DNA from: Macrostomum hystrix
Taxonomy: Eukaryota; Animalia; Platyhelminthes
Direction: 5' to 3'
Assembly: GCA_950097015.1 (NCBI GenBank)
Contig: CATNEN010000038.1
Coordinates: forward strand, 23,002,001 to 23,066,000
Length of the DNA stretch: 64,000 nucleotides
Shown here: in pieces, positions 5,604 to 59,400 of the stretch
How the letters are laid out: every line of letters begins with the position of its first letter
Position numbering within the stretch: position 1 is the first letter of the stretch
Notes under the pieces: model-generated
Told to the model about the DNA's origin: nothing
What the model saw: only the letters and a program-made list of their open reading frames with translations
Database searches by the model: none
Program-made: the position numbers and the translations under genes

Positions 5604-5899
5604 CCTTAAAAATTTATTAATATTATGCAAAGATAAAGCTTAATTGGATCTCAAGGGATGCTTTAGTTCGGCAATCCCTAACTCTTTATTCCACCCTGTA
5701 GTGATCTTCGCAGTCCTTTTACCTCTCGCTGTCTCCGCCCACGTGAGTTTAGGCTCTATTGCATGCAGTTATGTGACGCCTCTGCCGCAGGTTGGCGGCG
5801 AAAATCGAAGACAAGAAGCGGTTGCTCAAGCTTCTTCTTTACCCGGCTGGCTAGGACTTGCGGACGGTTGCCACGGTTTTGACTTGACGAGCAGTTCAC

Positions 5900-7460: not shown

Positions 7461-7475
7461 CTCTAAGCTTAAATG

Positions 7476-8355
7476 CTCATCTCTCACCAGTCTCATCTCT
7501 CACCAGTCTCATCCCTCACCAGTCTCATCTCTCACCAGTCTCATCTCTCACCAGTCTCATCCCTCACCAGTCTCATCCCTCACCAGTCTCATCTCTCACC
7601 AGTCTCATCTCTCACCAGTCTCATCCATCACCAGTCTCATCTCTCACCAGTCTCATCCCTCACCAGTCTCATCTCTCACCAGTCTCATCTCTCACCAGTC
7701 TCATCCCTCACCAGTCTCATCTCTCACCAGTCTCATCCCTCACCAGTCTCATCTCTCACCAGTCTCATCTCTCACCAGTCTCATCCCTCACCAGTCTAAT
7801 CTCTCACCAGTCTCATCCCTCACCAGTCTCATCTCTCACCAGTCTCATCCATCACCAGTCTCATCTCTCACCAGTCTCATCCCTCACCAGTCTCATCTCT
7901 CACCAGTCTCATCTCTCACCAGTCTCATCCCTCACCAGTCTCATCTCTCACCAGTCTCATCTCTCACCAGTCTCATCTCTCACCAGTCTCATCCCTCACC
8001 AGTCTCATCTCTCACCAGTCTAATCTCTCACCAGTCTCATCCCTCACCAGTCTCATCCCTCACCAGTCTCATCCCTCACCAGTCTCATCTCTCACCAGTC
8101 TCATCTCTGACCAGTCTCATCTCTCACCAGTCTCATCCCTCACCTGTCTCATCTTTCACCAGTCTCATCTCTGACCAGTCTCATCCCTCACCAGTCTCAT
8201 CTCTCACCAGTCTCATCTCTCACCAGTCTCATCCCTCACCAGTCTCATCCCTCACCAGTCTCATCTCTCACCAGTCTCATCTCTCACCAGTCTCATTCCT
8301 CACCAGTCTCATCCTTCACCAGTCTCATCCCTCACCAGTCTCATCTCTCACCAGC
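7476..8355. repeat. 16-bp minisatellite (CTCATCTCTCACCAGT)n
   Basis: Tandem array with period 16. Confidence 0.97.
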
Positions 8356-9009
8356 CTTATGTGCAGAAAGAAGGCACAAACTCGTAGAAGAAGATCTCTC
8401 CGAAATTATAGTGGGTCCAAACATTGTGTTAAAATGTTCAGTATGTATTGCCAAAACATTTCTAGGTAACATGTGCTGGGTAAACTCACTAGCATTGTCT
8501 ACATTGCTATTATTTAGGATTGCATCTCGAGTGTTTTCCTGAAGCTATTTTTAGCCCTAAAAACTGGTTGTGTCACTGGTGGCAGAACGAAAACTCCACG
8601 GAATTACCTTGAGCCGTATACGAGCGTATATATATCACTAGTCTTATATATCACTAGTCTCATCTCTCATCTCTCATCTCATAATATTTGTACTTTCATA
8701 ATATATATTTACATATGGTCAGAGATGATATGTAAAATATAAACCTGACTGACAAGAGATACTAGTAACAGTTCATCGGTTCTATCGTCAATTGGCCGGC
8801 AAAGGACTACATGAACAGAGGCTATGAGAAACTTTGTGACGGTCGCCATTTCTACAAGATCCTGGGTCGGCCAATGTACAAGAATATCAGCACGCGTCTA
8901 AGTCTAGCAGTCCAACGTCACCAATGTCCTTCGTGATCTGCTCCGTGTTGCTTACTTGACGTGTAGGCGACCATTGTTTACTGAGGATATTTTGCAGAGG
9001 CCATCCTAA

Positions 9010-9192
9010 CTAGCTTGGACTGGGCCTCCTAGGTGTAGCAAGTTGATGGTCCATTGGTTGATAATTCTCATCGACCACCTGTTGCGGTAGTCTATTCAGT
9101 AGCTGCTGCAGAGTAGATAACGCATCGACAGCGAATTCTGAAGCATGGCTGGGTTCCGACACTGACAGTTGAACTTCCATCCATGAGGCCAT
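9010..9192 (-). CDS. Micro-ORF family member C' (60 aa; MEVQLSVSEPSHA...DALSTLQQLL)
   Basis: Intact ORF, homologous to 1806-2024 and to the 59-aa A copies. Confidence 0.45.
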   Translation of the reverse strand: MASWMEVQLSVSEPSHASEFAVDALSTLQQLLNRLPQQVVDENYQPMDHQLATPRRPSPS

Positions 9193-9243
9193 CGAGCTTT
9201 CTGATGCTTATGTGAAAGCAAGTATGTCAAACTCATTAAACCG

Positions 9244-9281
<38 letters not shown>

Positions 9282-9298
9282 CAGATAGATAGATAGAT

Positions 9299-9334
<36 letters not shown>

Positions 9335-9389
9335 TTTCGATAGATAGATATTTAGATAGATAGATAGATAGATGATAGATAGATATTTC

Positions 9390-9432
<43 letters not shown>

Positions 9433-9515
9433 GATAGAGAGATATTTAGATAGATAGATTGATAGATAGATAGATAGATAGATGATAGATAGATATATAG
9501 ATAAATATATAGATG

Positions 9516-28355: not shown

Positions 28356-28551
28356 CAGTGTCAATGCTTAGATTAACAGCTCCGGTGAAAAAATTAGCTA
28401 GAATAAAATAAGCCAATCCGTATTGGCCAATTCTAGTTAGCAGCGTAGATTGAGATTGAGTGGCAGTGTTGCCTAGACAGAGAAGCTGGTTCAGTGTGAG
28501 CAGTAGCAGCACCTGACTACAGGAGGCTAAACAGGTGAGCATAAAGGCGGC
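28356..28551 (-). pseudogene. Duplicated 196-bp fragment of the PIGW last exon
   Basis: Matches 42852-43047 with two visible mismatches. Confidence 0.9.
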
Positions 28552-28625
28552 GATAAAGCATAAAGCATAAGCATAAGCATAAAGCATAAAAGCATAGAGG
28601 TTTGCAAAGTGGGTGAGGTGTCAGG

Positions 28626-42317: not shown

Positions 42318-42555
42318 GGGTCGGTGGCAGAGCGGCTATCGCGTTTGCCTCTCGCACCAAGGTCCCTAAGTTCGACTCCGCGGCGAGGCCACATTTATTT
42401 GGGGCGCAAACAGCCGCGGAGACAAGGCTTGGGGGCTTGTCGTGCAATTTACGCCCTTGAGGGCCAACCTCCAAGGCATAGTGAGATTGTACACTGCCTG
42501 ACGATAAGAAATACAGGGCAGATGTACACACCTGTATGAGCGTGTGCCTGCGTGA
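42318..42555 (+). mobile_element. tRNA-SINE copy
   Basis: A box, B box and body present. Confidence 0.88.
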
Positions 42556-42720
42556 TGATGTGTCATTGCCCGCAGATATGTGCAGCATCGCCTCTAGTCC
42601 ATGGACTGATCAGCCGTGCAATCAACTATTATTATTATTATTGTACAAATTAAATACGTAGGCATAAAAATATGCTTCACTTTTGTTAATAGCATCGACC
42701 ATATTATGTTATAGAATCGT

Positions 42721-45700
42721 TTAGTCCTGTTTTGTGAGCCGAAATTCGCGCCAACAATTGGTAGCGGATGCTACAAGAAGCAGACAGAGAACCAGACAGG
42801 CTAAATATGTGGACAATATAATCAGCGTTAGCCAATTATCAACAATAGACACAGTGTCAATGCTTAGATTAACAGCTCCGGTGAATAAATTAGCTAGAAT
42901 AAAATAAGCCAATCCGTATTGGCCAATTCTAGTTAGCAGCGTAGATTGAGATTGAGTGGCAGTGCTGCCTAGACAGAGAAGCTGGTTCAGTGTGAGCAGT
43001 AGCAGCACCTGACTACAGGAGGCTAAACAGGTGAGCATAAAGGCGGCATTGAACAATAGGCGAGACGGTTCAGTGTAGACTGGCGGCAGGTTGATTAGCG
43101 GCAGTAACCATGGCAACGCAACGAATGTGAGTAACATCAGAGGCCAGGTGATAAAACTGCTGGAATTGCCTGCAAATGGATAAGTATGCCTTTTAAATAC
43201 AGATACTCTATGCTAGCGGCATTTCAGAATTTTGTTTATTATAAATAGATCTTATCTAGACACTAATCTATCAGATCTTATCTAGACACTAATCTATCAG
43301 ATCTTATCTAGACACTAATCTATCAGATCTTATCTGGACACTAATCTATCAGATCTTATCTAGACACTAATCTATCAGATCTTATCTAGACACTAATCTA
43401 TCAGATCTTATCTAGACACTAATCTATCAGATCTTATCTAGACACTAATCTATCAGATCTTATCTAGACACTAATCTATCAGATCTTATCTAGACACTAA
43501 TCTATCAGATCTTATCTAGACACTAATCTATCAGATCTTATCTAGACACTAATCTATCAGATCTTATCGAGACACTTATCTATCGGATCTTATCTGGACA
43601 CTAATCTATCAGATCTTATCTAGACACTAATCTATCGGATCTTATCTAGACACTAATCTATCAGATCTTATCTAGACACTAATCTATCAGATCTTATCGA
43701 GACACTTATCTATCGGATCTTATCTGGACACTAATCTATCAGATCTTATCTAGACACTAATCTATCGGATCTTATCTAGACACTAATCTATCAGATCTTA
43801 TCTAGACACTAATCTATCAGATCTTATCTAGACACTAATCTATCAGATCTTATCGAGACACTAATCTATCAGATCTTATCTAGACACTAATCTATCAGAT
43901 CTTATCGAGACACTAATATATCAGATCTTATCTAGACACTAATCTATCGGATATTATCCAGACACTAATCTACGAGTACAGTTGATATTCGGTAGCCATC
44001 ACCAACGCACCATTGCCAGTAGCTGCAGCCAATCGTCGGCTAACAGCAGCGCCGGCGCAATAGACAGCGCAGTAGGCCGGCAGCGACAACAGACCCTCCT
44101 TGTTGGCTAACAGGGGCCACAGCTGTTGCCTGTCAGTGTCGGCTAGCAGGAAATCAGCTCCGCCGAGTGGCAGCAGCAGGCAGGCATGGCAAATACCCAG
44201 AATGACCGCCCACAGGCCTGGCCAACGGGACAGCGGCTGCCAGGCGGCTCTGAGGCAGGCCAAGGTGAGAAAGAAATTCCAATGCACTCCGTACTCAGTC
44301 ACGTGCTCCTGATGATAAATGGGAGGTGAGATGGGTGACCGTGATAAAAATAGTTGGCAGTTTAAAAACCAGGTTAATATTTAAAGGGACAATAAACTAG
44401 AGTGGCTAAACTTCAAATGGGGTTGTAGGGTTGAAGAGGCATGAGGTTGAAGGTTGAAGGACCAAAATTTTCAAGGGTCACGGGGTTAAGGAGTCGTGAG
44501 GTTGTAGGGTTACGCGGTTGAAGGGTCATCAGATCATGAGATTGAAGGGTTATCATGTTGTGAGGTTGAAGGGTCATCATGTTGTGAGGTTTAAGGTTGA
44601 ATCATTCACCTTATTAAAGGTTACGGCAGAGGGGTCTGTGGCAGAGCGGTTATCGCGTTTGCCTCTCGCGCCAAGGTCCCTAAGTTCGATTCCACGGCGA
44701 GGCCACATTTATTTGGGGCGCAGCCGCGGAGAGAAGGCTTGAGGGCTTGTCTTGCAATTTACGCCTTTGAGGGCCAACCTCCAAGGCACTGTGAGAGTGT
44801 ACACTGCCTGACGATGAGAAAGTCAGGGCAGATGTACACACCTGTGTGAGCGTATGCCTGCGTACAGTATCTGTGTGCGTGTGTGCTCAGGAGTCAGCGA
44901 AACGGGTAGAATTGCCTCCTCGCTGGCTGCGGGTCTAGTGTCACCAAACGATATGCCATTGCCCCAGCCCTCCTGCAATTATCATTTTATTAAAAGGTTA
45001 CGGCATTTAACTGAAGGTGAAATCCCAATCCACTACCTGATAATCCGAGGCCTTCACAGCCAAGGTTCTGGCCAAGCCCAGCAGAGCCAACGGCAGGCAG
45101 GCGGTGACAAGAGATCGACGCCACATGCTCAGCGACGCGCCCGATGGCGACGGTGGCGGCGCGAGTAGGCCGCTGGCGAAGGTGAAGGCAGGAGCGCCGA
45201 TGTCCATTAAGCCGACGCCAGCAGATTCAGCTTTGGCTAGACGGCGAGGCATTGCTGGGAAGTCAACGGCGAAGATAGCAACAGAAGTCTGCAGCAGCAG
45301 CAGAGACTGGAAAATATTTTCGCCATATTGGATTGAGTATGATTGAGTAGGGAAACGATTGGGGCTATTTGTATAAACAGTGCCTTGATTTCGGATTTGA
45401 AGGTTAAATCGAGTTTATTAACAGAAGTGGGTGGGATGAAATTGGAGGATTTCTTAATAAGAATGGGGTTACAGGACTAGAATCGGATTTGATTGATTGA
45501 GTTTGAATCGAGAATTGTGGTAAGATTCGATGATTTAGATGGGATTTTAGCCTTGAGGCAGGATTTCGGTAAGATCATTGGAGTGGGATTTGATGATTGG
45601 GTGGGATTTGATGATTGGGATAGGATTTGATGATTGGGGTGGGATTTGATGATTTGGATGGGATTTGATTATTGTGGTGGGATTTGATGATTGGGATGGG

Positions 45701-46534
45701 ATTTGATGATTTGGATGGGATTTGATGATTGGGTGGGATTAGATTATTGTGGTGGGATTTGATGATTTGGATGGGATTTGATTATTGTGGTGGGATTTGA
45801 TGATTTGGATGGGATTTGATTATTGTGGTGGGATTTGATGATTTGGATGTGATTCGATGATTGGGATAGGATTTGATGATTGGGGTGGGATTTGATTATT
45901 GTGGTGGGATTTGATGATTGGGATGGGATTTGATGATTTGGATGGGATTTGATGATTGGGTGGGATTAGATTATTGTGGTGGGATTTGATGATTTGGATG
46001 GGATTTGATTATTGTGGTGGGATTTGATGATTGGGATGGGATTTGATGATTTGGATGGGATTTGATGATTGTGGTGGGATTTGATGATTTATTGGGATTT
46101 GGGATTGAGTGTTTTGGAGGGACTGTTTCTGATTTAAGGATTCACATAATCCCACTCACCTGAAAATCCTTAAACAATTGCTTAGGTTGCGGCAGTGCAA
46201 CAATAAAATCGAAATTATTCCTCTGCGCAATGGGCACCAATAGCAGCAAGCAAGCCCCGGCTAAACAAACTAATTCGGTCACGTGATCGGCTAGTACAGT
46301 CAGCTGCAGCACAGCAGACAGGCACAATAAAATCGATTCCAAATAATTGATTAGCCGCATTGGTCCGAAGCAGCATCTCAACTGAGCAGTGACGCCCAAC
46401 AGTAGGCAGGGCAGACTCAGGTGCAGCCAAATCTCTGTTAGGCCGCAGCCTCCGTGACCAGCTATGAAAGCTTCGTGTTGAGCCTTCCTGCTAGTCATGT
46501 TATTAGTATTTTGATTGCGATTATCAGTTGCCAT
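42721..46534 (-). CDS. PIGW: GPI inositol acyltransferase (PIG-W/Gwt1), 4 exons (46534 or 46498-46160, 45306-45037, 44308-44011, 43169-42721), ~451-463 aa
   Basis: Motifs RKAQHEAF, AVDFPAMPRRLAKAESAGVGLMDIG, YQ|EHVTEYGVHWNFFLTL, NKEGLLSLPAY and ILANLFTGAVNL. All splice phases are compatible. Confidence 0.93.
43246..43970. repeat. 26-bp intronic minisatellite (AGATCTTATCTAGACACTAATCTATC)n
   Basis: Fills PIGW intron 3. Confidence 0.95.
44631..44980 (+). mobile_element. Full-length tRNA-SINE in PIGW intron 2
   Basis: A box, B box and full body present. Confidence 0.9.
45580..46100. repeat. 19-20-bp intronic minisatellite (GGGATTTGATGATTTGGAT)n
   Basis: Fills PIGW intron 1. Confidence 0.93.
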
Positions 46535-48081
46535 GCGGATGAGACTTGACTATGTCGTAGGTATTGACAATCAGATAGCTTGAGAATAGGCAGTACAGAT
46601 AGCGAAACCAAACTAGTTGACTGCGATGATGCCGCATGCAACGAAACGGTGTCAGCAGTTCAGCAGCAGGCGTGGCGAAGATTAATCCTGTTGGGCTGCT
46701 CTGCGGCCAGAAGTAGTTCTTTAGAACAGCTGGGATGCTGGCTAGAATGCCTATAAAATATAGGGATGAGAAACGGGAAGATAGGGGAAGAGGGGGTAGA
46801 TAAATGGTACACTGCCTGACAACGGGAGAACCTGTGTGAGCCAGTGCCTGCGTACAATATCTGTGTGCGTGTGTGCTCAGGAGTCAGCGAAATGGGCAGA
46901 ACTGCCTCCTCGCTGGCTGCGGGTCCAGTGTCACCAAATGATGTGCCATGGTGTGCTTATAGAAAAAGAATGATAGCCTAGTCTTGTAGAGTCAAAATAC
47001 TTACCGCTGTACTTTCGAATCAGCGATTCGGTACGCAGCAGCAGCACAGGCAGCTGGTGGCAGCAGTCAGCAGTGTCGCAAGCCCAGCGCTGCAGTGCCC
47101 GATGATTGGCGTGGCCGCTAACGCCGTCGCTGTCAAATGTAATCAGACAGTCAACCTGCCAATCAGCTAGCACGGGTCTAAGGCAGTTGTCTATGGCCGC
47201 AACTGACCAATCAACTGCGTTACTATCCGGCAATTGAGGATCGTCAATAATTTTTAATCTCCGACAGTCCTGTCCCAGTCCTTTCGTCCAGGCAGCTGTC
47301 AGTTCCTTAACACGCTGTTTACCCTGACCGTAGTAATCCCCTGACGACAGGCAGGCCAGGTAGAGCTCATAACGGCAAGATCTGCCTGCCGCTAGCAACA
47401 GGGGCGCAAAGAACATGCATTCGTCGTCAGGATGAGCGGTAACCAATAGCAACCGAATTGGGCGAAACCGAACTGAGACTTCAGCAGAGGATAACTGACT
47501 CTGATATGAAGAAAAATTAGGGAATTTATGAAGCACAGTAATAATGACTCTCATTCCAGGGGATCTGGGTATGACAGTAAACTGTCATACTGGGATTACT
47601 GGGATCACAGTAAATATAATGGGATCTGTGCCAACAGAATGGGATCTCTTTTAATAGAATGGGATCTCAGTAACTAGAATGGGATCTCAGTAAATAGAAT
47701 GGGATCTCAGTAAATAGAATGGGATCTGAGCATGAGAATGAGATCGAAAATTTAGTACGGGATATAGGAAACAGAATGGGATGTTAAAATTAGAATAGGA
47801 TCAGAATATTAGAATGGGATACGAGGATCAGAATGTGTTGGCTGGCTTAGACGACACGTCTAGAAAAATGCCTTTACTGAGCTTGAGCTTACCAACTTTA
47901 ATCTCTCTGATTCTAGTAGCAGATCGCCCAGCTGTTGCAGACACTTGTCACTGAGTCGGCAAGCAAGCCAATAAGCAGCAGCAGCAGTGCTAAATAGAGT
48001 AAACACGTTTCCAAGTATTAGTATCAACGGCGACAAGTAACCTAAGTCACCGAGAAGTGAGTAGTTAGACAGGTAATTGGA
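46524..48081 (-). CDS. PIGL: GlcNAc-PI de-N-acetylase (PIG-L), 3 exons (48081-47893, 47500-47005, 46750-46524)
   Basis: N-terminal TM segment, catalytic AHPDDE, ITFDSDGVSGHANH and C-terminal CMRHHRSQLVWFRYLYCLFSSY. Splice phases 0 and 1 are compatible. No ATG in the first exon. Confidence 0.93.
46805..46950 (+). mobile_element. Partial tRNA-SINE in the last PIGL intron
   Basis: 3' half of the SINE body. Confidence 0.85.
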
Positions 48082-48174: not shown

Positions 48175-48460
48175 GGGGCCAGCGGCAGAGCAGTTAACGC
48201 GTTTGCCTCTCGCACCAAGGTCCCTAAGTTCGATTCCACGGAGAGGCCATATTTATTTGGGGCGCAGCCGCGGAGGGAAGGCTTGGGGGCTTGTCGTGCA
48301 ATTTACGCCCCTTACACTGCCTGGCGATGAGAAAGTCAGGGCAGATGTACACACCTGTGTGGGTGTGTGCTCAGGAGTCAGCGGAATGAGCAGAATTGCC
48401 TCCTCGCTGGCTGCGGGTCTAGTGTCACCAAATGATGTGCCGTTAGCCGCAGCCCTCTGT
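48175..48460 (+). mobile_element. tRNA-SINE copy upstream of PIGL
   Basis: A box and B box present; internal deletions. Confidence 0.88.
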
Positions 48461-49719
48461 CATTAATGATTTAATTAGCGATCTAGATTTTTAGAAATAA
48501 AAACATTATCTATAGGATCTGTGCATCTTTATGTCTGTTTAAGTACATGAAATTTCGCTCTTAGCGAAGTGTGATTACGGCGTGTGCTATATATTTGTTC
48601 AGTATAGGTGACTGGTATGCCTGCAAAAAATCTAGAAAACAAAATAAAAATAAGATCAGAGTATTTGATAATGAAAAGTTTTTCAAACGAACAAAAATAT
48701 AATTTCTTTATTTAAAATATGAATTTATTGCGGCTACCATTCAGTCGTTAGATTGTCGAAGCTCGGACTTGAAGGTAGGGGGTTCGATTTCCAATTCAAC
48801 AGGTGGAACACGTTTTTGTAACTTAGCAACCAAGTCAGACAATAAACACTCCATGTGAGTGTCCATGGACTGAACAGCAGTACGCAGCTATCAGATGCGC
48901 CGCGCAATAGCTGCACACCTGGCTTAACTAGGCCAGGTAGAAAGAAATTAATATTTTAATTACCATTCGTTTAGCAGGCAAAAATACTGAACGAAGTAGG
49001 AAAAAAAGAAGAAAAAAAACGAGAAAAGAGAAAATTAAGTCTAACAAGCTGAAGTTTTGTGAGTGTGATGAATTAAAATGAGGCTTCCAGGCATCAGCAA
49101 ATAGAAATCAGTTCATAGCGATGATAAATTACTGCTATCGCTAACTATTGCAGAAATCGTGCAACCATATTAGAGAAATTTGATAATAACACTGCAGTAA
49201 GACTAAAAACTAATTGAATTTATAAATAGTAAATTAAGTATTAAGGTGAAGAACAAAAAAAGAAGATTTCGAAAGAAATAAAGTAATTAAAAAGCAATCG
49301 AGATTGGCAAGAATTAATTACAGAACCAGATAAACAAAACAAGTAACAAATCTATACTAACCTATACAAAGAGAACAGACAAGAGTTGAAATGAGATCTG
49401 ATGAAATACTGAAAAATAAAATAAAATGTTTTTACACACTTTCCGAGGGTTTTACGATTCGATAAACAATCTAACCATGCGATTGCAAAAATATACGGTG
49501 GACAACTACGACCAAGGCTTAAACCCTAAAATCAAAATAGATTAAAGAAGGAATTCAGTAGATAGGATTACAGTTTAATAATTTAATAAAGAACTTCCGA
49601 TGTATTCGGTAAGAGATTCCCAGGGGATTAATCAAATTGTTTTACGAGAAATGCCAAGAAATTCCCGATAAATTATTGATTTTTTTAGGAATATTCTGAC
49701 GAATTCAATAAGGAATTAA

Positions 49720-50535
49720 CGATGGATTTATCTGCGAATTTCCGATGGATTTATCAAGGAATTCCCGATGGATTTACCTGCGAATTTCCGATGGATTTAG
49801 GAAGAAATTCCCGGTGGATTTAGCAAGGAATTCCCGATGGATTTATCAAGGAATTCCCGATGGATTCACCTGCGAATTTCCGATGGATTTAGCAAGGAAT
49901 TCCCGATGGATTTATCAAGGAATTCCCTATGGATTTATCAAGGAATTCCCGATGGATTTACCTGCGAATTCCCGATGGATTTAGGAAGAAATTCCCGGTG
50001 GATTTAGCAAGGAATTCCCGATGGATTTATCAAGGAATTCCCGATGGATTTACTAAGGAATTTCTGATGGATTTAGCAAGGAATTCCTGATGGATTTATC
50101 AAGGAATTCCCGATGGATTTACCTGCGAATTCTCGATGGATTTAGGAAGAAATTCCCGGTGGATTTAGCGAGGAATTCCCGATGGATTTACCAAGGAATT
50201 CCCGACGGATTTACTAAGGAATTTCTGATGGATTTAACAAGGAATTCCCGATGGATTTACCAAGGAATTCCCGATGGATTTACCAAGGAATTCCCGATGG
50301 ATTTACCAAGGAATTCCCGATGGATTTACTAAGGAATTCCCGATGGATTTACCAAGGAATTCCCGGTGGATTTACCAAGGAATTCCCGATGGATTTACCA
50401 AGGAATTCCCGGTGGATTTACCAAGGAATTCCCGATGGATTTACCAAGGAATTCCCAGTAGATTTACCAAGGAATTCCCGATGGATTTACCAAGGAATTC
50501 CCAGTGGATTTACCAAGGAATTCCCGATGGATTTA
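49720..50535. repeat. 23-bp minisatellite (GGAATTCCCGATGGATTTACCAA)n; related arrays at 53560-53700 and 54000-54250
   Basis: Shared GGAATTC-N-GATGGATTT core on both sides of BPNT2. Confidence 0.93.
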
Positions 50536-51014
50536 GCTAGCAATTCCAGAATGATTTGCTTGGGAGTTCCTGGACAATTAACCAAGAAATATCAATACGA
50601 TTTTCAAGGTTTATTTGAAATTCTAAATGCATTTTACAAGAAATCTTAAATAAATTTATACACGCTATTTCTTAAGTAATGCCAGAAAATAAACAGCTTA
50701 GACTACAAGCAACAGAATTTTTAAGTTTAAAACAAAAATTTACTAGTTAAAAGTTCAACGAACCAAACATAGGCATTTTTGTGACATAAGCATCTTGGAA
50801 AAAGTAGGAAACAAAAATAAGAGTAAAATAGAGTAAATCTAGAGATAATCTAGATTATATTCCAGAGGGAATGGGGTTGTCAGTCAATAAATCAGTTGTC
50901 GAATTATCAATACTGTCAACATTTTAAACTTATCTCTTTCTTTTGTCAACACTTAAACAAACCAGCTGTGCAATGCAATCAATTGTGCAATTTATTACAC
51001 CAAAATAGCCGTTG

Positions 51015-53504
51015 CTATCCTGTAGTTCGACTTTGCTGCTGCTGCTGCTTCGGCTTCAATTTCGAGACTGGAGCGAATGCGACAAAGCCGTCTGAATGTC
51101 GCGGCAGGTCAGGACTGGCATAGTCAATGCTCCTTAGCCTACCAGCCCCGCCTGCTTTGTCATCGGCGCCATCCAGACTGTAAAGCTTGCCGCCCAGACT
51201 CTCAAGTATGGCGTGCCCAGCGCATAGATCCCATTTAGATATTGGGCCAGTGTGCAGGTAGTTGTCGGCTAGGCCCTGCGTTGCGAAGCGATCAATAATG
51301 AGCATAGGTGTCGAGTAAACATGCTTTCACATTTTCTAGGTTTCTAGAAGTACTCAGAGTTGGTTGGTAATAAAATCAAAACCTTTGCCTCTCTATTGTA
51401 ACTGCTTCCCCATTCTCCTATCCTCTCCCTCCCTCTCCTATATTCTCCCTCCCTATCTTATCCTCTCCATCTACTATCCCCTCCCTCCCTCTACTATCCC
51501 CTCCCTCCCTCCCTCTCCTATCCTCTCCCTCCCTCTCCTCTCCTCTCCCTCCCTCTACTATCCCCTCCCTCCCTCTCCTATCCTCTCCCTCCCTCTCCTC
51601 TCCTCTCCCTCCCTCTACTATCCCCTCCCTCCCTCTCCTCTCCTCCCCCTCCCTCTCCTCTCCTCTCCCTCCCTCTACTATCCCCTCCCTCCCTCTCCTC
51701 TCCTCTCCCTCCCTCTCCTCTCCTCTCCCTCCCTCTACTCTCCTCTCCCTCCCTCTCCTATCCTCTCCCTCCCTCTCCTCTCCTCTCCCTCCCTCTACTA
51801 TCCCCTCCCTCCCTCTCCTATCCTCTCCCTCCCTCTCCTCTCCTCTCCCTCCCTCTACTATCCCCTCCCTCCCTCTCCTCTCCTCCCCCTCCCTCTCCTC
51901 TCCTCTCCCTCCCTCTACTATCCCCTCCCTCCCTCCTATCCCCTCCCTCCCTCTCCTCTCCTCTCCCTCCCTCTCCTATCCTCTCCCTCCCTCTCCTCTC
52001 CTCTCCCTCCCTCTACTATCCCCTCCCTCCCTCTCCTCTCCTCCCCCTCCCTCTACTATCCCCTCCCTCTCCTATCCTCTCCCTCCCTCTTCTCTCCTCT
52101 CCCTCCCTCTACTCTCCTCTCCCTCCCTCTACTATCCCCTCCCTCCCGCTACTATCCTTTAATTCATAATGGATGGTTGTGAAAATACAGAAAATCAGCA
52201 ATAATTTCCCCATCTATCTCACCTTGCTGAGCAGTAGAAGCTTATAACCAGCGCCAGCAGCCGATAGTAGCTCCATAGACTCGTTAGGGAACAATTTCTT
52301 GGCTCTGTCTAGTAAATCGGAGCTCTGATGACTGCGCGAGACTAGCACTCGCCTGCTGGCTTGGTCGGCATTTTTCTTTGACGACTGACCGGCCTTGATC
52401 TCGCCGCTGCTAGTTAAGCTTTGGAGCACAATTGGCAGATTAATATTACCCTGCAGACTGTCGGATACTTTCAAATTGCGCCAGGCCCAATAGGTGCGAT
52501 TGGCGAATGGAAAGTGAAGCACGCCGACAAGCGGCACGCCTCTGTAGGCTACGCACACCTGTTTATATGTTTATAAATTTATATCTTAACCACTCTCTCC
52601 TTTCCTTTACCCGTCTGGCATTTCCTCTCCCTTCTATCCTTTCCTCTCCCTCATCTGTCCTTTCCTCTCCGCCTCAGTGCTTTCCTCTCCCACTGTCATT
52701 TCCTCTCCCATTGTGATTTCCTCTCCCACGGTCATTTCCTCTATCTGTCTGCCCTTTCTTCTCTCACTGTCCTTTCCTCTTCCAATCTGCCATTTCCTCT
52801 CCCCTTCTGTCATTTCCTCTCCCCTTCTGTCCTTTCCTCTTCCCATCTGTCCTTTCCTGCCCCCCCGTCTGTCCTTTCCTCTCCCACTGTCTTTTACTCT
52901 GGCCTGGGTAAGTTTCGCTTAAAAATGTGAATTCCTACTATTTTTCAATACAAGCGTAGAAAGTTATAACCATGAAAGCGAGATAAACAGGGCAACTCAC
53001 CTGAACGGACACATACTGCAACATGTGCTCAGTAAACTCCTGCGTACCATCCAATGGATCAACCCACACTAAGACGTCCTTAGAATTGACAAAGAAATCG
53101 TGCCTCAACGGTTCCACATCCGGGTGTCGATGGCTGGCCAGAGCCAGAGCTCGATAATCCAACGGGGCCGCCTGAGCCTCTTCCGATACCAGACGCAGCC
53201 ATGGAAACGATTTGTGAAAGCCATAGACTAATTCGGCATTGGCCGCCAAATCCGCTTGCGTCACTGGCGGCGCCTGGTCGCTAATGTAAACACCGGCCTT
53301 AGTAACGCGAATAGCTTCCCGATGCCTAATAATTAATTGGCCAGCCCGTTCGCATAGTTCAATGCTGACAGACAGCAGCTCCTTGACCGAGACGCCGCGA
53401 CCGCCGCTAAGAAGCGGCACCTCAGTGTGGATCAGGAATAATATAGCCACACCGCTGGCTAGGCAGAAAGCCCCCAGTTTGTTTATCCTCAGACGGCACA
53501 CCGC
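51015..53504 (-). CDS. BPNT2: Golgi PAP phosphatase / inositol monophosphatase 3, 3 exons (53504-53001, 52558-52223, 51275-51015), ~367 aa
   Basis: N-terminal TM anchor, TQAD, SEE, WVDPLDGTQEF, VSRSH, GAGYK and KWDLCAGHAIL. All introns are phase 0. Confidence 0.9.
51420..52155. repeat. Polypyrimidine (CT-rich) tandem repeat in BPNT2 intron 2; a second CT-rich repeat at 52620-52900 in intron 1
   Basis: Period of about 20/60 bp, almost purine-free on the plus strand. Confidence 0.93.
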
Positions 53505-55696
53505 CTGCAATGGGGGATCGATTCAGGATGGTACTCAGTCTGATTTTCAAATAAACTCCATTCGAATTCCTGATGGATTTCCCATGGAATTTCCAAAGGA
53601 TTTCCTATGGAATTCCCGATGGATTTCCTATGAAATTCCTGAAGGATTTCCCATGGAATTTCCAAAGGATTTCCTATGGAATTCCCGATGGATTTCCTAA
53701 CATATCTATCAGAAAAATGTCTAATGGATCTCTGTAACTCCTAAAAGAAAGCGTAACGGATTTTTTAGCCATAATTTTTTTCTACAACTATTCTTAATAA
53801 ATTTTCTAAAAGTAATTTCCTTAAAATCAATCAATTGCCGGATTTCACAAAGGAATTCCGAGACAGATTTTTGGAATTTCTTAAGGATTTTTAATAGAAC
53901 TTTATTCCTAGACGGGTTTTTAAAGGAAGTCCCTGATATACATTATTAAAGGAATTCCCACACCGATTTCTTAAAGGGATCCACAGACCAATTTTTTAGA
54001 GGAATTCCCTGATGGATTGGAAAAGGAATTCACTGATGGATTTAAAAAGGAATTCACTGATGGATTTGAAAAGGAATTCTCTGATGGATTTAAAAATGAA
54101 TTCTCTAATGGATTTGAAAAGGAATTCTCTGGTGGATTTAAAAAGGAATTCTCTGATACATTTAAACAGGAATTCTCTGATACATTTAAAAAGGAATTCA
54201 CTGATGTATTTGAAAAGGAATTCTCTGATGGATTTAAAAAGGAATCCTTTAAGGATGTCCAAAAGGAATTCCCAAATAAATTTTAAAAAATGTATTCCTA
54301 AACGAATCTCGAGAAGGAATCCCCAAAATTATTTCCAAAAGAAATTCTCTAAAGAATTTCCAAAAAGTAATTCCATGACGGCTTTTTTTGAAGTAGCTGC
54401 ATCTATTTTTAATGTAACACAAAAATGTTAAATTTGGCAACCATTTTATCACGAGACAAGACAATAGATAACAAAAGTATGCTTAACTGAGCAAGTGTTT
54501 TACAAAATTGGGCCCCGTATATTTAAAATTTTTACTAATAAAAAGATTTCCATAATATCTGTTCTTTGTTTAAACAAGAGACTTTCAAATTTTTGTTTAA
54601 ACGCACAAAAGTCGCAAGATAACACAAAAGGAATGATATTAAAAAGGAATAAAAGACTCGCATAAATCATGGTTGAATACAGTATAGAAGAAAGGAATGA
54701 AGGTACAATAATTAAGCAACAACAATCAAATAGAGCGCCTTTTAATTGATAGTTATTGCTTAATTAGTCCATGCCTAATGTCTAAACATAAGGAGCGGTT
54801 TCGATTTAAACTCACTAAAAGTAAGCATGCTACTAAATTTATTAATAGTAGTCAGTAGTATGCATAGATAAGAATAGTTAAAATATATACCAAAGGACAA
54901 AACAAAAAAGTATCTCTTGATCAGTAATAAAAACTTTGCAATATACTTGTGTATAAAACTATACAAAAGCATTCAATGTGGAATGCTTAGTAACACGCAA
55001 ATGGTCAGTATCACAGTGCTAAACGTATCTACAAGTAACTTAAAAAAGGATTAAAGTTTTATTTTATTTTTTTGGTTTACAAAAAAATAAAAAAACATGA
55101 TCTAATTTATAGTGCTGGTTGCTGAAAAGCAATCATGAAGATCTAAAAAATACAATAGAAGTGTACAAAAAAATTAAAAATCAAACAAAGGACTAATTTA
55201 TGGTGTAAGAAAATACTTACAGGTTCAAAAAATGAGGAGAAATGAAAAGAAGAACAAAAGATAGCCAATTCCATTTAGAGATCGATACGTAAAAATAGTC
55301 TTATCTACAGTCGCAGACTGACAATTTGCATCAAATTTATGAGAATCGAACAGTGGTACTTATGGGGAATGTTTCGAATATTAATGGCCAGTGAGAGAGA
55401 GAGCAAAACTGATTGAAAATCTTTGGGTTTAGGTCTAGCTGTTTGATGCTTGTTCTAAAAGATTATCCTGGTATCTGAGTAAGAAAATTATTGAACAAAT
55501 ACATCTAGGTTAGTAGTTTAAAATATTCTTAAACCACTTAAATATTGAAAGGTTGCTTACAACTAAGTATTGTTAGGTATTAGAAGACCTAAATGGTTCT
55601 CACAATCAACTACTGATAATGATACATTTAGAAATCAAGGAAGAAAGCGTGCCATTGTTAGTTTAAAAATCAATATTGAACATCAGGCGACCCAGT

Positions 55697-56413
55697 TTAA
55701 ATAACAGACGACATAGATCTACCAGACGGAATTGTGCCCATCAGCTGATCCGTAGACTTGCCATTATTCATAGGGAAGGCGTACTCTCTCTGTACCATTA
55801 GTTCGCGATCTAGTTTCACCTGTGGCACTAGAAAACAGCTAGTAAAGAAGCAGAAGATGACAGATAGTACAGCCAAGCCGAAGCTCCATGATGGCCAATT
55901 AAGTTCGGGATTCGGCAGCCAATAGGGATCTAAGCATTTGCCGCCGAACACAGCGATGCCAACACCAATCAGTGCGCCAATGAATAGCATTCCGTAGGCC
56001 AAGCAGCGGCTTAGCAGCGCCCGCCTCTCTGGATTATCGACGCAGCGAACAACATAGATAACGCAGAGGATTAGCGCGCCAATGTGCAATAGCAGGCCTA
56101 GGGTGATGCAGAACTGAACAAAGCGAAACCAAGGCGGCATTAAATAATCCCTAATGGGATAAAACTCCGGCGCAAATGACCACCAGCAGCCGAAGTAGGA
56201 TCGCATCTCGGGATCTAGACGATGAACTAAACCATCTAGACAGAACTCCCATAGGCCCAGTCGGTCCATTGGTGTGTGCACTCTCGGCCAGCTTTGCAAC
56301 CAGAATGGCGTCACAAAAGACAATAGAACGCACACAAAGCTAAACACTGTACACACTAATGCTGCTCTTGCATAGCCGGACACTATTATATGCTTCTCGG
56401 AGTTGACCGACAT
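55697..56413 (-). CDS. Invertebrate claudin-like / PMP22-superfamily 4-TM protein (238 aa from MSVN)
   Basis: TPFW, GLWEFC...C signature, four hydrophobic segments, SWSFGLA before TM4, and C-terminal SSVI (PDZ-binding-like). Confidence 0.85.
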   Translation of the reverse strand: MSVNSEKHIIVSGYARAALVCTVFSFVCVLLSFVTPFWLQSWPRVHTPMDRLGLWEFCLDGLVHRLDPEMRSYFGCWWSFAPEFYPIRDYLMPPWFRFVQFCITLGLLLHIGALILCVIYVVRCVDNPERRALLSRCLAYGMLFIGALIGVGIAVFGGKCLDPYWLPNPELNWPSWSFGLAVLSVIFCFFTSCFLVPQVKLDRELMVQREYAFPMNNGKSTDQLMGTIPSGRSMSSVI

Positions 56414-59400
56414 TGCACTCCAAAGCTGGGGGAGATTTTCTGTGTTGGCACAGTGATTCTTTAACTGTACGATCTGATTGATTTTTTTCACACTATACTG
56501 TCACTGAAATTAGCAAACATGTGCATACCTTATTAGTTATTTATTGTAAGTATAAAATATAATAATATATGCTCAGTAGCATTAGCAGTAGCAAAAGTTC
56601 AAGATAAAATATGCAAACAAGATAATGCACTGAGTTGTATCAGAAAAGAACTTATTCATACAGCAAAAATATACATATGCAGTTTTATTAAAACAACTAA
56701 AGAACAATTTTAGAAAATATAATACCAAATACAGTGCTAATAACAGTAAGTTAAGCTGATTATCAACTAGTTAACAAACTAACACAGATTTTTGTTGATG
56801 ATGATCATCATTAGATTCAAAATTTTAAATTAAATTTTAACTTTATTTTTCTAAGTAAAATGAACAAGTTAGTTATTTCCAACTGTTTTACAATGACAAG
56901 CATAAATTAAAGAACACCTATTTGAAAAGCAATTAGTTATACTGACTATATGCATTGTATTTGAGTTTTATACAAATAATAGCTAACAATAATGTTTATG
57001 AATCAGCAGTAGTTTTTTATATATTGTTCAATATTGTTTTTGTTAGAAAAAAAACTAATAGTAAAAAGTGCTGTTTTCTACTGTTTCTTTAGTTATCAAT
57101 CTATTAGCTACTTTAAAAGAAAAAATAGAAAAGTAAAACTACAACAGTAAAATGTTTTTTTCACTTAAAAATGTCAAAAATACTACTTTTATTAAAATGG
57201 CTATCAATTTTTAATTTTCACAATTGCCACTCTATTTTTCTTCTTTGTCAAGTAATTTATTTGATTCTGCAATTTGTGTTCTGATTGGCATTTTGACAAT
57301 GGCTAAGGCTACAAGTGATGATTGTATCAATATTAGGATAAGTAGCAGTGTCAGTGACAAAAATGCAAATTATCTTGAGAATGAGAATCTGAATGTTTAA
57401 TGAGATTGATTCTTAACTAGGCTCTGATGATGATGATGATTATAAGAGCATTAAAAAAGAGCAAACATCTTCCATTACAAAGAATATCGCACCAAAAATT
57501 AAATATTATATCCTTCTATTAAAGCTATGTTTGCTTATAAAAAATAGCATGTTTTTATAATTATTTTTTTTTCAAAATGTGCTATTTATATCTTAACCAA
57601 GTACATTATTCCTTATTAGCAATAGTCTACCCAACCATACCCAACTCCAAGTTTTAATGTTTCAATTTTATTCACTTAGTATTACATTACTAGCATTATA
57701 TATTCAGTTTTTATACTGAGCAGCTATTAAAAAATATGTTTAAATATTATTAGCTATTTGGGTTTATAAGCATTAACATTCATTTAATCTGAAGCATATT
57801 GTAAATAGTAGTTACTATATATAGTATGAAATAAATCTTATGGGAGAGCTGCAGTTAGCCATTGCTGACTAGGCTAACTTGAACTAATTGCTTATAGCTT
57901 TTTCAGTTTTTTTCTGTTTTTTTTTCAGTTCTATTTAGCAATAGTATTTGTTTTGCATATTTATTATTTAGTTTAAATCAATGCTTTTGTAAAAAAATGA
58001 TTTTGGCCTCAGTTCTGGTGATATGATAATGATGAGGCAATAGGGCAACTAATATACCATTAATACCCATGCTTTAAGGGTGTTAATGAAAAATCTGAAG
58101 GGGCTGTTAGCCCAAAGGTTGTGTATCAATTTTAGCATACCATAGATGTTTTTGCCCAAGCTATACTTTCAGAGTCAGAGACAGGGGTGTGGGACAAAGC
58201 CCCCACTTTGGGGTGCCATAGACATTTTAGCCTCAGTAAGCCATTCCTATTGGTCAATGCTTTTTTGTGGGTGGTTAATGGTTATTAACTGCCCACAAGA
58301 AAAATTAAATTACTAAGCATTAATTCATCTATGGCCATTAACAGGCAAGACTTTCTGCCTGTCATGGTACAACAGGTTTTTTCCAAAGCAGATGCTAGCC
58401 ATGAAGCTTATTGAATATTGAAACATGATGAGGCATGACTAGATACTAGTTGGCTCTAGGCCTAATTAAACTATGTTTTGGCCATAGACAGACTAGTTGG
58501 CATTGGCATGACTAGTTGGATCAAATTCAGACTCTATGTGATTCCTAGGCACCAATTCAAACTTATAAATCATTGCACAAAAAATTGTAATTGCTGATTA
58601 TGCTTTGATTCTTAGTATTTATTGAAAATATTACCGCACAAACATATAGCCTGTCTCTGATGTAAAACTACTTAACTAGTCAGATAAAAATGCTAAAAAA
58701 ATTGTAAAAAATGAATAGCTAGGCCTATATGTTTTAAAACTTTAAAATTATTCTCTTGGATTTTGCTACCTCAATAATGAAATGTAACAATAAGGCAGCT
58801 AGGACTACAGAGACATTTGCAAATATAGGCCTATGTATATTTTTAATTCTTTCTTGATTTTCTACAAAACAAAACAGGTGCCATGTAGCACGTTGCCTAT
58901 AAGAAAAAAAGCATGAATAAGTGGTGCAGCACAATATACAAAGGAAGCATTCGCGAACAAAACCCGTTTTCATAAAATCTGCCTTGTCTAAAGTAGCTAG
59001 CTAGCAATAAAAATGCGGCTCTGTACGCTTTGTAGATAATTATGCAACCTGAATAAGTCAATGAGCAGACGTTTATTGTATGACCTGCAACCTTCATTTC
59101 AGTCCTCGTAAGTTGTATACTATACTATAAGCAATTATATTACAATTTTAATTCTTTAGAGTGAATACAGGGGTTAAAATCAGTAGTTGGCTTATAAGTT
59201 GCTGCAGAGTGATCCATTGACACAGAGGGGATATAAAGTTCGCCCCTTCCGATAACCATTTTGCCTTTTGTAAAAAATCCAGATTCCAGTCAACAGCATA
59301 CCGATACAGTACAGTACTATAATTTTAAACGACAACTTCCTTCTAATTTTAAAACAGTGCTAATTATAGTTATAACAAGCATATACATAGCAAGATCTGC

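What the first reader, a model, noticed from the sequence alone, without database searches (positions are those of the whole stretch)
46496..46552. PIGL and PIGW, consecutive GPI-anchor enzymes, overlap stop-over-start: candidate eukaryotic pathway operon
Seen: on the minus strand PIGL ends CAT CCG CAT GGC AAC TGA TAA (TGA at 46526-46524). The first PIGW ATG (46534) lies inside these codons in the +1 frame, an 11-nt overlap. The second ATG (46498, MTSRKAQHEAF) is only 25 nt past the stop, and that spacer has no AG and no AATAAA. Established: PIG-L de-N-acetylates GlcNAc-PI and PIG-W acylates the product in the next step; the genes are not adjacent in human; a GPI gene on a bicistronic mRNA is known (PIGY/PYURF). 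Inference: they share one transcript. PIGW could be made by (a) termination-reinitiation, (b) trans-splicing at GACATAG|TCA (46550), which cuts inside the PIGL CDS, is in frame for a leader AUG and would make the two products mutually exclusive, or (c) a +1 frameshift at AAC-UGA-U, resembling the antizyme UCC-UGA-U site, giving a fusion protein.
Basis: partly seen in the sequence, partly recalled or inferred. Interest (0 to 1): 0.92.

Follow-up and report, generated by a model that had tools for sequence, protein, structure and literature searches.

The report
Overlapping PIGL-PIGW operon pair, flatworm
In the flatworm Macrostomum hystrix, the genes for two consecutive steps of GPI-anchor synthesis (PIGL, then PIGW) overlap by 11 bases, appear on one spliced RNA contig and are equally tightly linked in M. 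lignano. This is an unusually tight case of the spliced-leader operons already common in this genus, and how PIGW gets its own message or start is still unknown.

Summary
On the minus strand PIGL ends TGA TAA (46526-46521). PIGW ATG1 (46534) lies 11 nt inside PIGL. ATG2 (46498) lies 25 nt past the stop, and that spacer has no AG and no AATAAA.

The genome is Macrostomum hystrix. It carries the published AUG-ending Macrostomum spliced leader, and the genus is reported to have about 15% of genes in operons.

In each of three runs of one study, a single spliced contig of about 2.4 kb runs from PIGL exon 1 through the junction to the PIGW exon 1 donor and onward. PIGL has no ATG of its own, so it needs the leader's AUG.

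In M. lignano the pair is just as tightly linked. Three gene models join the two ORFs in frame, and the PIGW proteins start upstream of the ATG2 position.

So "one transcription unit" is supported, but it is an operon member in an operon-rich genus, not an exceptional eukaryotic operon. The route to PIGW protein could not be tested, because only contigs were available. The candidates are trans-splicing inside the PIGL coding end, a true bicistronic mRNA, an internal promoter, or a fusion.

The scan has noted other overlapping pairs in this genome, but not this one.

The parts
47893..48081 (-). PIGL exon 1. It encodes the TM anchor and contains no ATG in any frame. The predicted SL acceptor ttttcag| at 48084-48082 fits the published YTNCAG motif and is in phase with the leader's AUG.
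   Evidence: 0 ATG in 189 nt; contigs cover 48041/48048-47893 and splice to 47500; homology to the M. lignano PIGL N-terminus, which also lacks a Met. Motif from PMC8629364.
47005..47500 (-). PIGL exon 2, the catalytic PIG-L domain with the AHPDDE and HANH motifs.
   Evidence: PF02585, E=1.8e-17; joints 47500|47893 and 46749|47004 with GT..AG on the minus strand; 60% identity to M. lignano.
46524..46750 (-). PIGL exon 3, the C-terminal part (...SQLVWFRYLYCLFSSYLIVNTYDIVKSHPHGN), followed by the stops TGA (46526-46524) and TAA (46523-46521).
   Evidence: 56% identity to M. lignano up to ...LLINT; the contig is continuous from 46749 to 46160.
46524..46534 (-). The 11-nt overlap of PIGW ATG1 with the last PIGL codons (CATGGCAACTGA).
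46160..46534 (-). PIGW exon 1, running from ATG1 (46534) or ATG2 (46498) to the donor cag|gtgagt at 46160.
   Evidence: GWT1 profile positions 2-91; 64% identity to M. lignano PIGW residues 1-136; the contig leaves the genome exactly at 46160.
45037..45306 (-). PIGW exon 2.
   Evidence: GWT1, E=4e-14; 80% identity to M. lignano. Boundaries read from AG/GT sites and frame.
44011..44308 (-). PIGW exon 3.
   Evidence: E=1e-19. (single copy).
42721..43169 (-). PIGW exon 4, including the stop TAA at 42723-42721.
   Evidence: E=2.5e-15.. Contig length fits the exons plus about 160 nt of 3'UTR (inference).
46545..46551 (-). Candidate SL acceptors inside the PIGL coding end. ATAG| at 46551-46550 puts the leader AUG in the PIGW frame, giving M-SSLIR-MATDN... 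CAAG| at 46546-46545 puts the leader AUG in the PIGL frame, giving a 7-codon uORF.
   Evidence: Read from the sequence. Neither site fits YTNCAG. No RNA evidence either way.
46579..46580 (-). Candidate acceptor ctgcctattctcaAG|, which has the best pyrimidine tract. The leader AUG would open a 27-codon uORF whose TGA overlaps ATG2 (AUGA).
   Evidence: Read from the sequence. Untested.
46484..46485 (-). Candidate Ciona-type junction. The third AG after the PIGL stop (ggaAG|GCT) is the only one of the three in the PIGW frame. The leader AUG would give M-AQHEAF... It is preceded by an A-rich 40-nt stretch containing AAUACU and AAUAAC.
   Evidence: Read from the sequence. It has a poor pyrimidine tract. 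Untested.
46453..46499 (-). Stable RNA hairpin that begins at ATG2.
   Evidence: 111-nt window, -33.4 kcal/mol, z=-3.75, 0 of 200 shuffles as stable. The upstream window is unremarkable (z=+0.66).

Best explanation
PIGL and PIGW are a conserved gene pair with no space between them, transcribed together as part of a spliced-leader (SL) operon of Macrostomum hystrix.

PIGL has no start codon of its own. It is opened by the AUG that ends the trans-spliced leader, at the acceptor ttttcag|TCC (48082|48081).

PIGW's start region overlaps the last PIGL codons. PIGW therefore cannot be released in the usual way, by poly(A) cleavage of the upstream gene followed by SL addition about 100 nt later.

The most likely route is SL trans-splicing at an AG in or just after the PIGL coding end. 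The in-frame site at 46550 is the best fit, because the leader AUG, ATG1 and ATG2 then all read PIGW. A given precursor would then yield either a PIGL mRNA or a PIGW mRNA, as proposed for the operons without intercistronic sequence in Ciona and the SL1-type operons of C. elegans.

Shown here: the anatomy, the SL genes, spliced RNA contigs that cover both genes, and the linkage in M. lignano. Inferred: a single precursor molecule, the position of the PIGW acceptor, and mutually exclusive processing.
For: Anatomy and gene identities.

Species: the genome's size and contig count equal those of the M. hystrix assembly.

Spliced leader: the published 35-nt M. lignano leader ending in ATG occurs exactly at least 23 times. 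Some copies lie in arrays spaced 11.6 kb apart. There are 149 matches with up to 3 mismatches and 0 for the reversed control.

Literature: operons and SL trans-splicing are common in the genus (PMC8629364; PMC5730564; PMC10468722).

PIGL start: exon 1 has no ATG, and its acceptor fits YTNCAG in phase 0.

RNA: in each of runs X2-X4, one contig of 2388-2421 nt covers PIGL exons 1-3. It then runs uninterrupted from 46749 to the PIGW exon-1 donor at 46160 and continues for 1146-1178 nt. That length matches PIGW exons 2-4 plus a 3'UTR. Introns have zero depth.

M. lignano:
- Three UniProt models (P0121, P0124, P0125) contain PIGL joined to PIGW exon 1.
- Four NCBI PIGW proteins carry 'g2', 'g3' or 'g9' tags. 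In that annotation scheme these mark a gene inside a multi-gene transcriptional unit.
- PIGW there starts MVSMATLTNISSS..., upstream of the ATG2 position.

Precedent: operons without intercistronic sequence and mutually exclusive processing are described for Ciona and C. elegans (PMC1488885; PMC12582326).
Against: - No SL-to-PIGW junction was seen. The contigs do not break at any candidate acceptor. However, they also stop 33-40 nt short of the PIGL acceptor, so 5' ends are simply not assembled in these runs.
- A contig across two genes does not prove a single molecule.
- None of the candidate AGs fits the YTNCAG motif, which covers about 44% of M. lignano SL sites.
- No separate M. lignano PIGL protein turned up in the searches. 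This would fit an mRNA that is not cut between the two ORFs. It could equally reflect the loss of an ORF that lacks an ATG.
- All three informative runs come from one study.
Confidence: 0.5

Rival explanations
1. The mature mRNA is truly bicistronic. One SL-capped, polyadenylated mRNA carries both ORFs, and PIGW is translated from it. Translation would occur either by termination-reinitiation at ATG1 (11 nt before the stop) or ATG2 (25 nt after it), or by leaky scanning past the weak-context leader AUG and the few internal AUGs.
For: - Fully spliced contigs cover both ORFs, with no break and no intron signal.
- Only 4 ATGs lie in the 901 nt before ATG1, against 13.0 +/- 3.4 in mononucleotide shuffles. 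Three of the four have a pyrimidine at -3, whereas ATG2 has A at -3.
- PIGL has only 2 Met in both Macrostomum species, 0.66% against a median of 1.86% in 120 homologues.
- No separate PIGL protein appears in the M. lignano NCBI set.
- As leads only, earlier scan notes report other overlapping two-gene SL-capped mRNAs in this genome.
- PYURF-PIGY is a known bicistronic GPI mRNA.
Against: - Reinitiation after a 304-codon ORF is normally very inefficient.
- No UGGGA (TURBS-like) motif is present upstream, by my reading.
- The depletion of out-of-frame ATGs is the same in the PIGW control (3 vs 7.1 in PIGL; 4 vs 8.6 in PIGW), so the leaky-scanning signature is not specific to PIGL.
- Two in-frame internal AUGs would trap scanning ribosomes.
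- Contigs cannot show that a single molecule carries both ORFs.
Confidence: 0.25
2. These are two overlapping but independent genes. PIGW has its own transcription start inside PIGL (intron 2 or exon 3), the PIGL 3'UTR runs into PIGW, and the assembler merged the two mRNAs into one contig.
For: - De Bruijn contigs join any RNAs that share 31 nt, and the tool itself warns that a contig across two genes shows no single transcript.
- A transcript starting in exon 3 would carry the 37-codon uORF from ATG 46637, which ends 25 nt before ATG2. That is a layout compatible with reinitiation.
Against: - The layout has zero or negative spacing and is kept in a species whose proteins are only 56-70% identical.
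- The M. lignano annotation places PIGW as a downstream gene of a transcriptional unit.
- PIGL intron 2 is only 254 nt and is largely a SINE copy.
- Operons are the rule for such closely spaced pairs in this genus.
Confidence: 0.12
3. A PIGL-PIGW fusion protein is made, either by a +1 frameshift at AAC-UGA-U or by removal of a mini-intron that takes out the stop.
For: - Three M. lignano UniProt models read PIGL in frame into PIGW exon 1 (...SSYLLINTPSNHGDKATRKAAHEAF...).
- In M. hystrix, a GT at 46550 paired with an AG at 46485-46484 would remove 67 nt and fuse the frames (read).
- A stable hairpin follows the stop.
Against: - M. hystrix has two consecutive stops and a frame change.
- The RNA contigs show the unspliced junction, and the joint table has no 46550>46484 joint.
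- The donor GTCAAG does not fit the GT[G/A]AG motif.
- The hairpin starts 27 nt after the UGA, too far for a frameshift stimulator (from my own knowledge).
- Chimeric models of operon genes are a frequent annotation artefact in flatworms (PMC12582326).
- The NCBI M. lignano PIGW proteins are separate and their N-terminus aligns contiguously with M. hystrix DNA.
- No protein family with both domains was found elsewhere.
Confidence: 0.05

Closest known systems
Spliced-leader operons of Macrostomum lignano (Wudarski 2017, PMC5730564; Ustyantsev & Berezikov 2021, PMC8629364)
   Same: Same genus and an identical 35-nt leader ending in AUG. Both have same-strand neighbouring genes within a transcriptional unit, conserved housekeeping genes, and an upstream gene that takes its AUG from the leader.
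   Different: The typical repeat-corrected intergenic distance is about 100 bp. Here it is -11 nt (ATG1) or +25 nt (ATG2), so the acceptor cannot lie in an intergenic spacer. Trans-splicing of PIGW in M. hystrix is not shown.
Operons without intercistronic sequence in Ciona intestinalis, and SL1-type operons of C. elegans (PMC1488885; summarised in PMC12582326)
   Same: There is no intercistronic DNA. Processing of one precursor into the upstream or the downstream mRNA is expected to be mutually exclusive.
   Different: In those cases the poly(A) site abuts the acceptor and the coding regions do not overlap. Here the downstream start codon lies inside the upstream CDS. In S. mansoni, the only flatworm analysed for this, all 45 operon pairs had at least 5 bp between cistrons.
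Human PYURF-PIGY bicistronic mRNA
   Same: A GPI-biosynthesis gene is expressed as the second ORF of a two-ORF transcript.
   Different: The upstream ORF there is a small, unrelated protein and no trans-splicing is involved. Here both ORFs are full-size enzymes of consecutive steps. The upstream ORF has 304 codons.
Chimeric gene models of flatworm operon genes (PMC12582326)
   Same: The M. lignano models P0121, P0124 and P0125 join two unrelated Pfam domains of neighbouring operon genes. This is the pattern that paper describes.
   Different: Here the join is in frame, with no detectable spacer at protein level, in three loci. A real spliced fusion isoform cannot be excluded without the DNA.

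Membership tests
SL-resolved operon (flatworm type) | Neighbouring genes on the same strand at a very short distance. | tested here: met
   the distance is -11 nt (ATG1) or +25 nt (ATG2), on the minus strand.
SL-resolved operon (flatworm type) | The organism has SL RNA genes and uses SL trans-splicing. | tested here: met
   the exact published leader is present, including copies in arrays. PMC10468722 reports that about 20% of M. hystrix genes are SL-trans-spliced.
SL-resolved operon (flatworm type) | One primary transcript spans both cistrons. | tested here: inconclusive
   in each of three runs of one study, one spliced contig covers both genes. Contigs cannot prove a single molecule.
SL-resolved operon (flatworm type) | The downstream cistron receives the spliced leader. 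| not testable with these tools
M. lignano tags PIGW as g2, g3 or g9 of a transcriptional unit, but the cut site is unknown.
SL-resolved operon (flatworm type) | The arrangement is conserved in a relative. | tested here: met
   M. lignano PIGL and PIGW exon 1 are contiguous in three models, and the PIGW N-terminus is homologous to the overlap region.
Operon without intercistronic sequence (Ciona / SL1-type) | The poly(A) site of the upstream mRNA abuts the SL acceptor of the downstream mRNA. | not testable with these tools
   No 3'-end or SL-junction reads were available. Candidate AGs at 46484, 46488 and 46491 follow an A-rich stretch containing AAUAAC.
Bicistronic mRNA translated by termination-reinitiation | A restart AUG lies close to the upstream stop. 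| tested here: met
   ATG1 lies 11 nt before the stop and ATG2 lies 25 nt after it.
Bicistronic mRNA translated by termination-reinitiation | An upstream 18S-complementary element (TURBS-like UGGGA) or a short upstream ORF. | tested here: not met
   No UGGGA occurs in the 120 nt before the stop, by my reading. The upstream ORF has 304 codons.
Antizyme-like +1 programmed frameshift | A 0-frame stop at the shift site with the ORF continuing in the +1 frame. | tested here: met
   AAC UGA U, with the PIGW frame open in +1.
Antizyme-like +1 programmed frameshift | A stimulatory structure immediately 3' of the shift site. | tested here: not met
   the stable hairpin (z=-3.75) starts 27 nt after the UGA. 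Only a weak 4-bp stem lies over the site itself.
Natural PIGL-PIGW fusion gene | One continuous ORF across both domains. | tested here: not met
   M. hystrix has TGA TAA and a frame change. The RNA contigs keep them. No two-domain proteins were found outside the M. lignano models.

The most novel reading that the evidence does not exclude
The mature mRNA is a true SL-capped bicistronic message, and Macrostomum makes a full-size membrane enzyme (PIGW) from the second, overlapping ORF after a 304-codon first ORF. Alternatively, the worm sets the PIGL:PIGW ratio by choosing, on each precursor, between polyadenylation and trans-splicing inside the PIGL coding end. Either route would couple two consecutive GPI steps in one unit. 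Together with the other overlapping pairs noted in this genome, it would define a class of overlapping-cistron operons in flatworms.
Probability: 0.25. Interest if true: 0.7.

Novelty: new member of a known kind. Interest (0 to 1): 0.45.

Why it matters
This is a clean, conserved case in an animal of two consecutive enzymes of one pathway packed into one transcription unit with overlapping coding regions. The enzymes are GlcNAc-PI de-N-acetylase, followed by inositol acyltransferase.

The overlap rules out the standard way of resolving an operon, which is poly(A) cleavage followed by leader addition in a spacer. The locus is therefore a convenient test case for a question the flatworm literature says it could not answer for lack of 3'UTR data (PMC12582326): how flatworm operons without a spacer are processed or translated.

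It also explains why gene predictors fuse the two genes in M. lignano. For GPI biology it suggests selection for co-expression of steps 2 and 3. In the wider context it is one more operon in a genus that has thousands.

Tried and rejected
M. lignano DNA at the junction and the neighbouring genes in other flatworms could therefore not be fetched.
- The PIGL exon-2 search found no close relative (best 45% identity). The reason is that the M. lignano cluster representative is the 418-aa joined model, which falls outside the length window.
- The search for two-domain PIGL+GWT1 proteins elsewhere found none in the 120 best PIGW relatives or in 30 Atlas clusters.
- The ATG-depletion (leaky scanning) test gave a signal in PIGL, but the PIGW control shows the same depletion of out-of-frame ATGs. 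I rejected it as specific evidence.
- The frameshift stimulator test found a structure, but at the wrong distance.
- Supplement searches of three Macrostomum papers for PIGL, PIGW or the Mlig identifiers found nothing.
- A literature search for PIGL + PIGW + operon returned only bacterial papers.
All searches used single exons by reference. Residue and ATG counts were made exon by exon and summed.
- I could not decide whether the M. lignano in-frame join (...LLINT|PSNHGDK...) is a predicted or real mini-intron or contiguous DNA. The contiguous alignment of MVSMAT... to M. hystrix DNA favours a spliced or chimeric model.
Full report
OBSERVATION

Reading the minus strand confirms every coordinate in the finding.
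- PIGL ends ...CAT CCG CAT GGC AAC TGA. The TGA is at 46526-46524 and is followed directly by a second in-frame stop, TAA (46523-46521).
- The first ATG of the downstream ORF is at 46534, in the +1 frame, so the overlap is 11 nt.
- The second ATG is at 46498, 25 nt after the TGA.
- The 25-nt spacer has no AG and no AATAAA.
- The AG of GACATAG| (46551-46550) forms the end of an in-frame TAG of the PIGW frame. An exon starting at 46549 would therefore be in frame with both ATGs.

Pfam confirms the gene identities. PIG-L (PF02585) matches at E=1.8e-17. GWT1 (PF06423) matches all four PIGW exon ORFs in profile order. The three downstream exon ORFs pass the gathering score, and the exon-1 ORF falls just below it.

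ORGANISM

The window lies in a genome of 220,453,370 bases in 42 contigs. These are exactly the figures for the Macrostomum hystrix assembly in PMC10468722, Table 1. Earlier notes of this scan name the same species.

The published 35-nt M. lignano spliced leader ends in ATG (PMC8629364). It occurs without mismatch at least 23 times in this genome, and some copies lie in arrays spaced 11.6 kb apart. The reversed control gives 0 hits.

In M. lignano, about 30% of genes are reported as SL-trans-spliced and about 15% as being in operons. The repeat-corrected intergenic peak is near 100 bp, and the acceptor motif is YTNCAG. For M. hystrix the genome paper reports about 20% trans-spliced genes.

The finding therefore sits in a genus where operons are routine.

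GENE MODELS

The models rest on RNA joints, homology and reading frame.
- PIGL: exon 1 at 48081-47893, exon 2 at 47500-47005, exon 3 at 46750-46524.
- PIGW: exon 1 at 46534 (or 46498)-46160, exon 2 at 45306-45037, exon 3 at 44308-44011, exon 4 at 43169-42721.

PIGL exon 1 contains no ATG in any frame. The ATG at 47554 that opens the long genomic ORF lies in the intron. The acceptor ttttcag|TCC (48082|48081) fits YTNCAG and is in phase, so PIGL most probably starts with the leader's AUG. The M. lignano PIGL models also begin without a Met.

Upstream on the same strand lie a BPNT2-like gene (also without its own ATG) and a claudin-like gene. They are separated by 2-3 kb of repeat-filled DNA.

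RNA EVIDENCE

Only assembled contigs were available. In each of three runs of one study (X2-X4, organism B), a single contig of 2388-2421 nt behaves as follows:
- it covers 48041/48048-47893;
- it splices to 47500-47004 and then to 46749;
- it runs without a break through the stop/start junction to 46160, the PIGW exon-1 donor;
- it continues for 1146-1178 nt.

That continuation equals PIGW exons 2-4 (1017 nt) plus about 160 nt of 3'UTR. The match is my inference, because that part lay outside the laid stretch.

Introns have no depth, so this is spliced RNA. PIGL has a single locus in the genome, so a retrocopy is not the source.

The limits of this evidence are as follows.
- A contig across two genes does not prove one molecule.
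- The contigs stop 33-40 nt short of the predicted PIGL acceptor. The 5' terminal parts and SL junctions are therefore not assembled in these runs, and the absence of a break at a PIGW acceptor carries little weight.
- Any functional PIGL mRNA must cross every acceptor that lies upstream of its stop.

RELATIVES

A full-library search with the PIGW exon-1 ORF gave one hit, an M. lignano UniProt model of 418 aa (P0121). PIGL runs in frame into PIGW exon 1 in that model, and the match is 70% identical. Two more models share the same join.

Four NCBI M. lignano PIGW proteins (479 aa or a fragment) carry locus tags ...g2...g3 or ...g9. In the scheme of PMC5730564 these tags mark genes inside a multi-gene transcriptional unit.

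These proteins start MVSMATLTNISSSPSNHGDKATRKAAHEAF. BLAST and tblastn align this contiguously with the M. hystrix DNA from 46543 onward. MAT aligns with ATG1, and an alanine or lysine falls where M. hystrix has ATG2.

I draw two conclusions.
- The tight PIGL-PIGW linkage is conserved between two Macrostomum species whose proteins are only 56-70% identical.
- The shared start region is the upstream, overlapping one, not ATG2.

The in-frame join in the UniProt models is most simply a chimeric or mini-intron model. Such chimeras are common for flatworm operon genes (PMC12582326).

No separate M. lignano PIGL protein turned up. This may mean the mRNA is not cut between the two ORFs, or that an ORF without an ATG was dropped from the annotation.

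No two-domain PIGL+GWT1 protein appears among the 120 best PIGW relatives or in 30 Atlas clusters.

MECHANISM

The overlap rules out standard resolution in a spacer. The options, read from the sequence, are these.

(i) SL addition at 46550. The leader AUG, ATG1 and ATG2 all read PIGW, which makes this a robust design.

(ii) SL addition at 46545 or 46579. The leader AUG opens a short uORF that ends at the PIGL stop, or at a TGA overlapping ATG2.

(iii) A Ciona-type junction at the in-frame AG at 46485-46484, after an A-rich 40-nt tail containing AAUAAC. The leader AUG would then start PIGW at AQHEAF.

(iv) A true bicistronic mRNA.

(v) An internal promoter.

(vi) A fusion protein.

None of the candidate AGs fits YTNCAG.

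I tested three predictions.
- Leaky scanning. ATGs are scarce before ATG1: 4 in 901 nt, against 13.0 +/- 3.4 in shuffles. PIGL has only two Met in both species, at conserved sites. However, out-of-frame ATG depletion is the same in the PIGW control, so this is not specific evidence.
- Frameshifting. The only strong structure (z=-3.75) starts at ATG2, 27 nt after the UGA. The upstream window is unremarkable.
- Splicing of a fusing mini-intron. The joint table lists no such joint.

I rank the explanations as follows: SL resolution inside or at the PIGL end about 0.5, bicistronic translation about 0.25, internal promoter about 0.12, and fusion about 0.05.

COMPARISON WITH WHAT IS KNOWN

The locus works like a Macrostomum SL operon, and more specifically like the operons without intercistronic sequence in Ciona and the SL1-type operons of C. 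elegans. For those, mutually exclusive production of the upstream and downstream mRNA has been proposed (PMC1488885; PMC12582326).

It differs in that the coding regions themselves overlap. In S. mansoni, all 45 analysed pairs had at least 5 bp between cistrons.

PYURF-PIGY shows that a GPI gene can be the second ORF of an mRNA, but that architecture is different.

Membership in the SL-operon class is met for spacing, SL machinery and conservation. It is inconclusive for a single precursor and untestable here for SL addition to PIGW.

VERDICT

The anatomy is real and conserved. It is a new, unusually tight member of a known kind, and it pairs consecutive pathway enzymes. Interest is moderate (0.45). 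It would rise to about 0.7 if the second ORF proves to be translated from a mature bicistronic mRNA, or if processing choice sets the enzyme ratio.

The scan has noted other overlapping or bicistronic pairs in this genome (MED9-GEMIN6, YAE1-like-TGS1, COPS9-lectin receptor). I used these as leads only.

No exon-joined protein was used in any search.

Noticed in passing
window 28372-28568 (-): A fragment of about 197 bp is about 99% identical to the middle of PIGW exon 4, with no homology in the flanks. It lies about 14 kb downstream on the same strand and looks like a recent fragment copy, not a second gene.
   Followed up: partly
window 46830-46950; similar copies at 44830-44960, 48340-48450 and 42500-42560: A SINE-like repeat, with a tRNA-like part nearby, sits in PIGL intron 2, in other introns and in flanking DNA. 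RNA contigs of this element reach a summed depth of 5,000-9,500 in runs X2-X4, against 14-19 for the PIGL/PIGW exons.
   Followed up: no
window 46453-46499 (-): A stable RNA hairpin begins exactly at PIGW ATG2. In a 111-nt window it gives -33.4 kcal/mol, z=-3.75, with 0 of 200 shuffles as stable. Its function is unknown and conservation could not be checked.
   Followed up: partly
window 43247-43972, 45573-46089, 47600-47835, 49700-50560, 51430-52150: Long tandem arrays with periods of 19-26 nt or more fill the PIGW and PIGL introns and the gaps between the same-strand genes. They inflate the apparent intergenic distances, as described for M. lignano operons.
   Followed up: no
window 51015-53510 (-) and 55697-56491 (-): A BPNT2-like gene whose first exon has no ATG of its own, and a claudin-like gene, lie upstream of PIGL on the same strand. 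The BPNT2-like gene has AATAAA about 20 nt after its stop, so a larger four-gene unit is possible but was not tested.
   Followed up: no
M. lignano proteins P0121, P0124, P0125 versus P0122: The UniProt models join ...LLINT directly to PSNHGDK..., whereas the NCBI PIGW proteins have MVSMATLTNISSS before the same PSNHGDK. P0124 also lacks 8 residues (VSGHANHR) of the zinc-site motif. These differences may be paralogue variation or model artefacts in the polyploid M. lignano assembly.
   Followed up: partly
run X1 (organism A), window 46680-47425: A 492-nt spliced PIGL contig from a second study shows 5 differences and the same exon 2-3 joint. It comes from a close strain or species, and it ends before the junction, so it says nothing about the overlap.
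   Followed up: no
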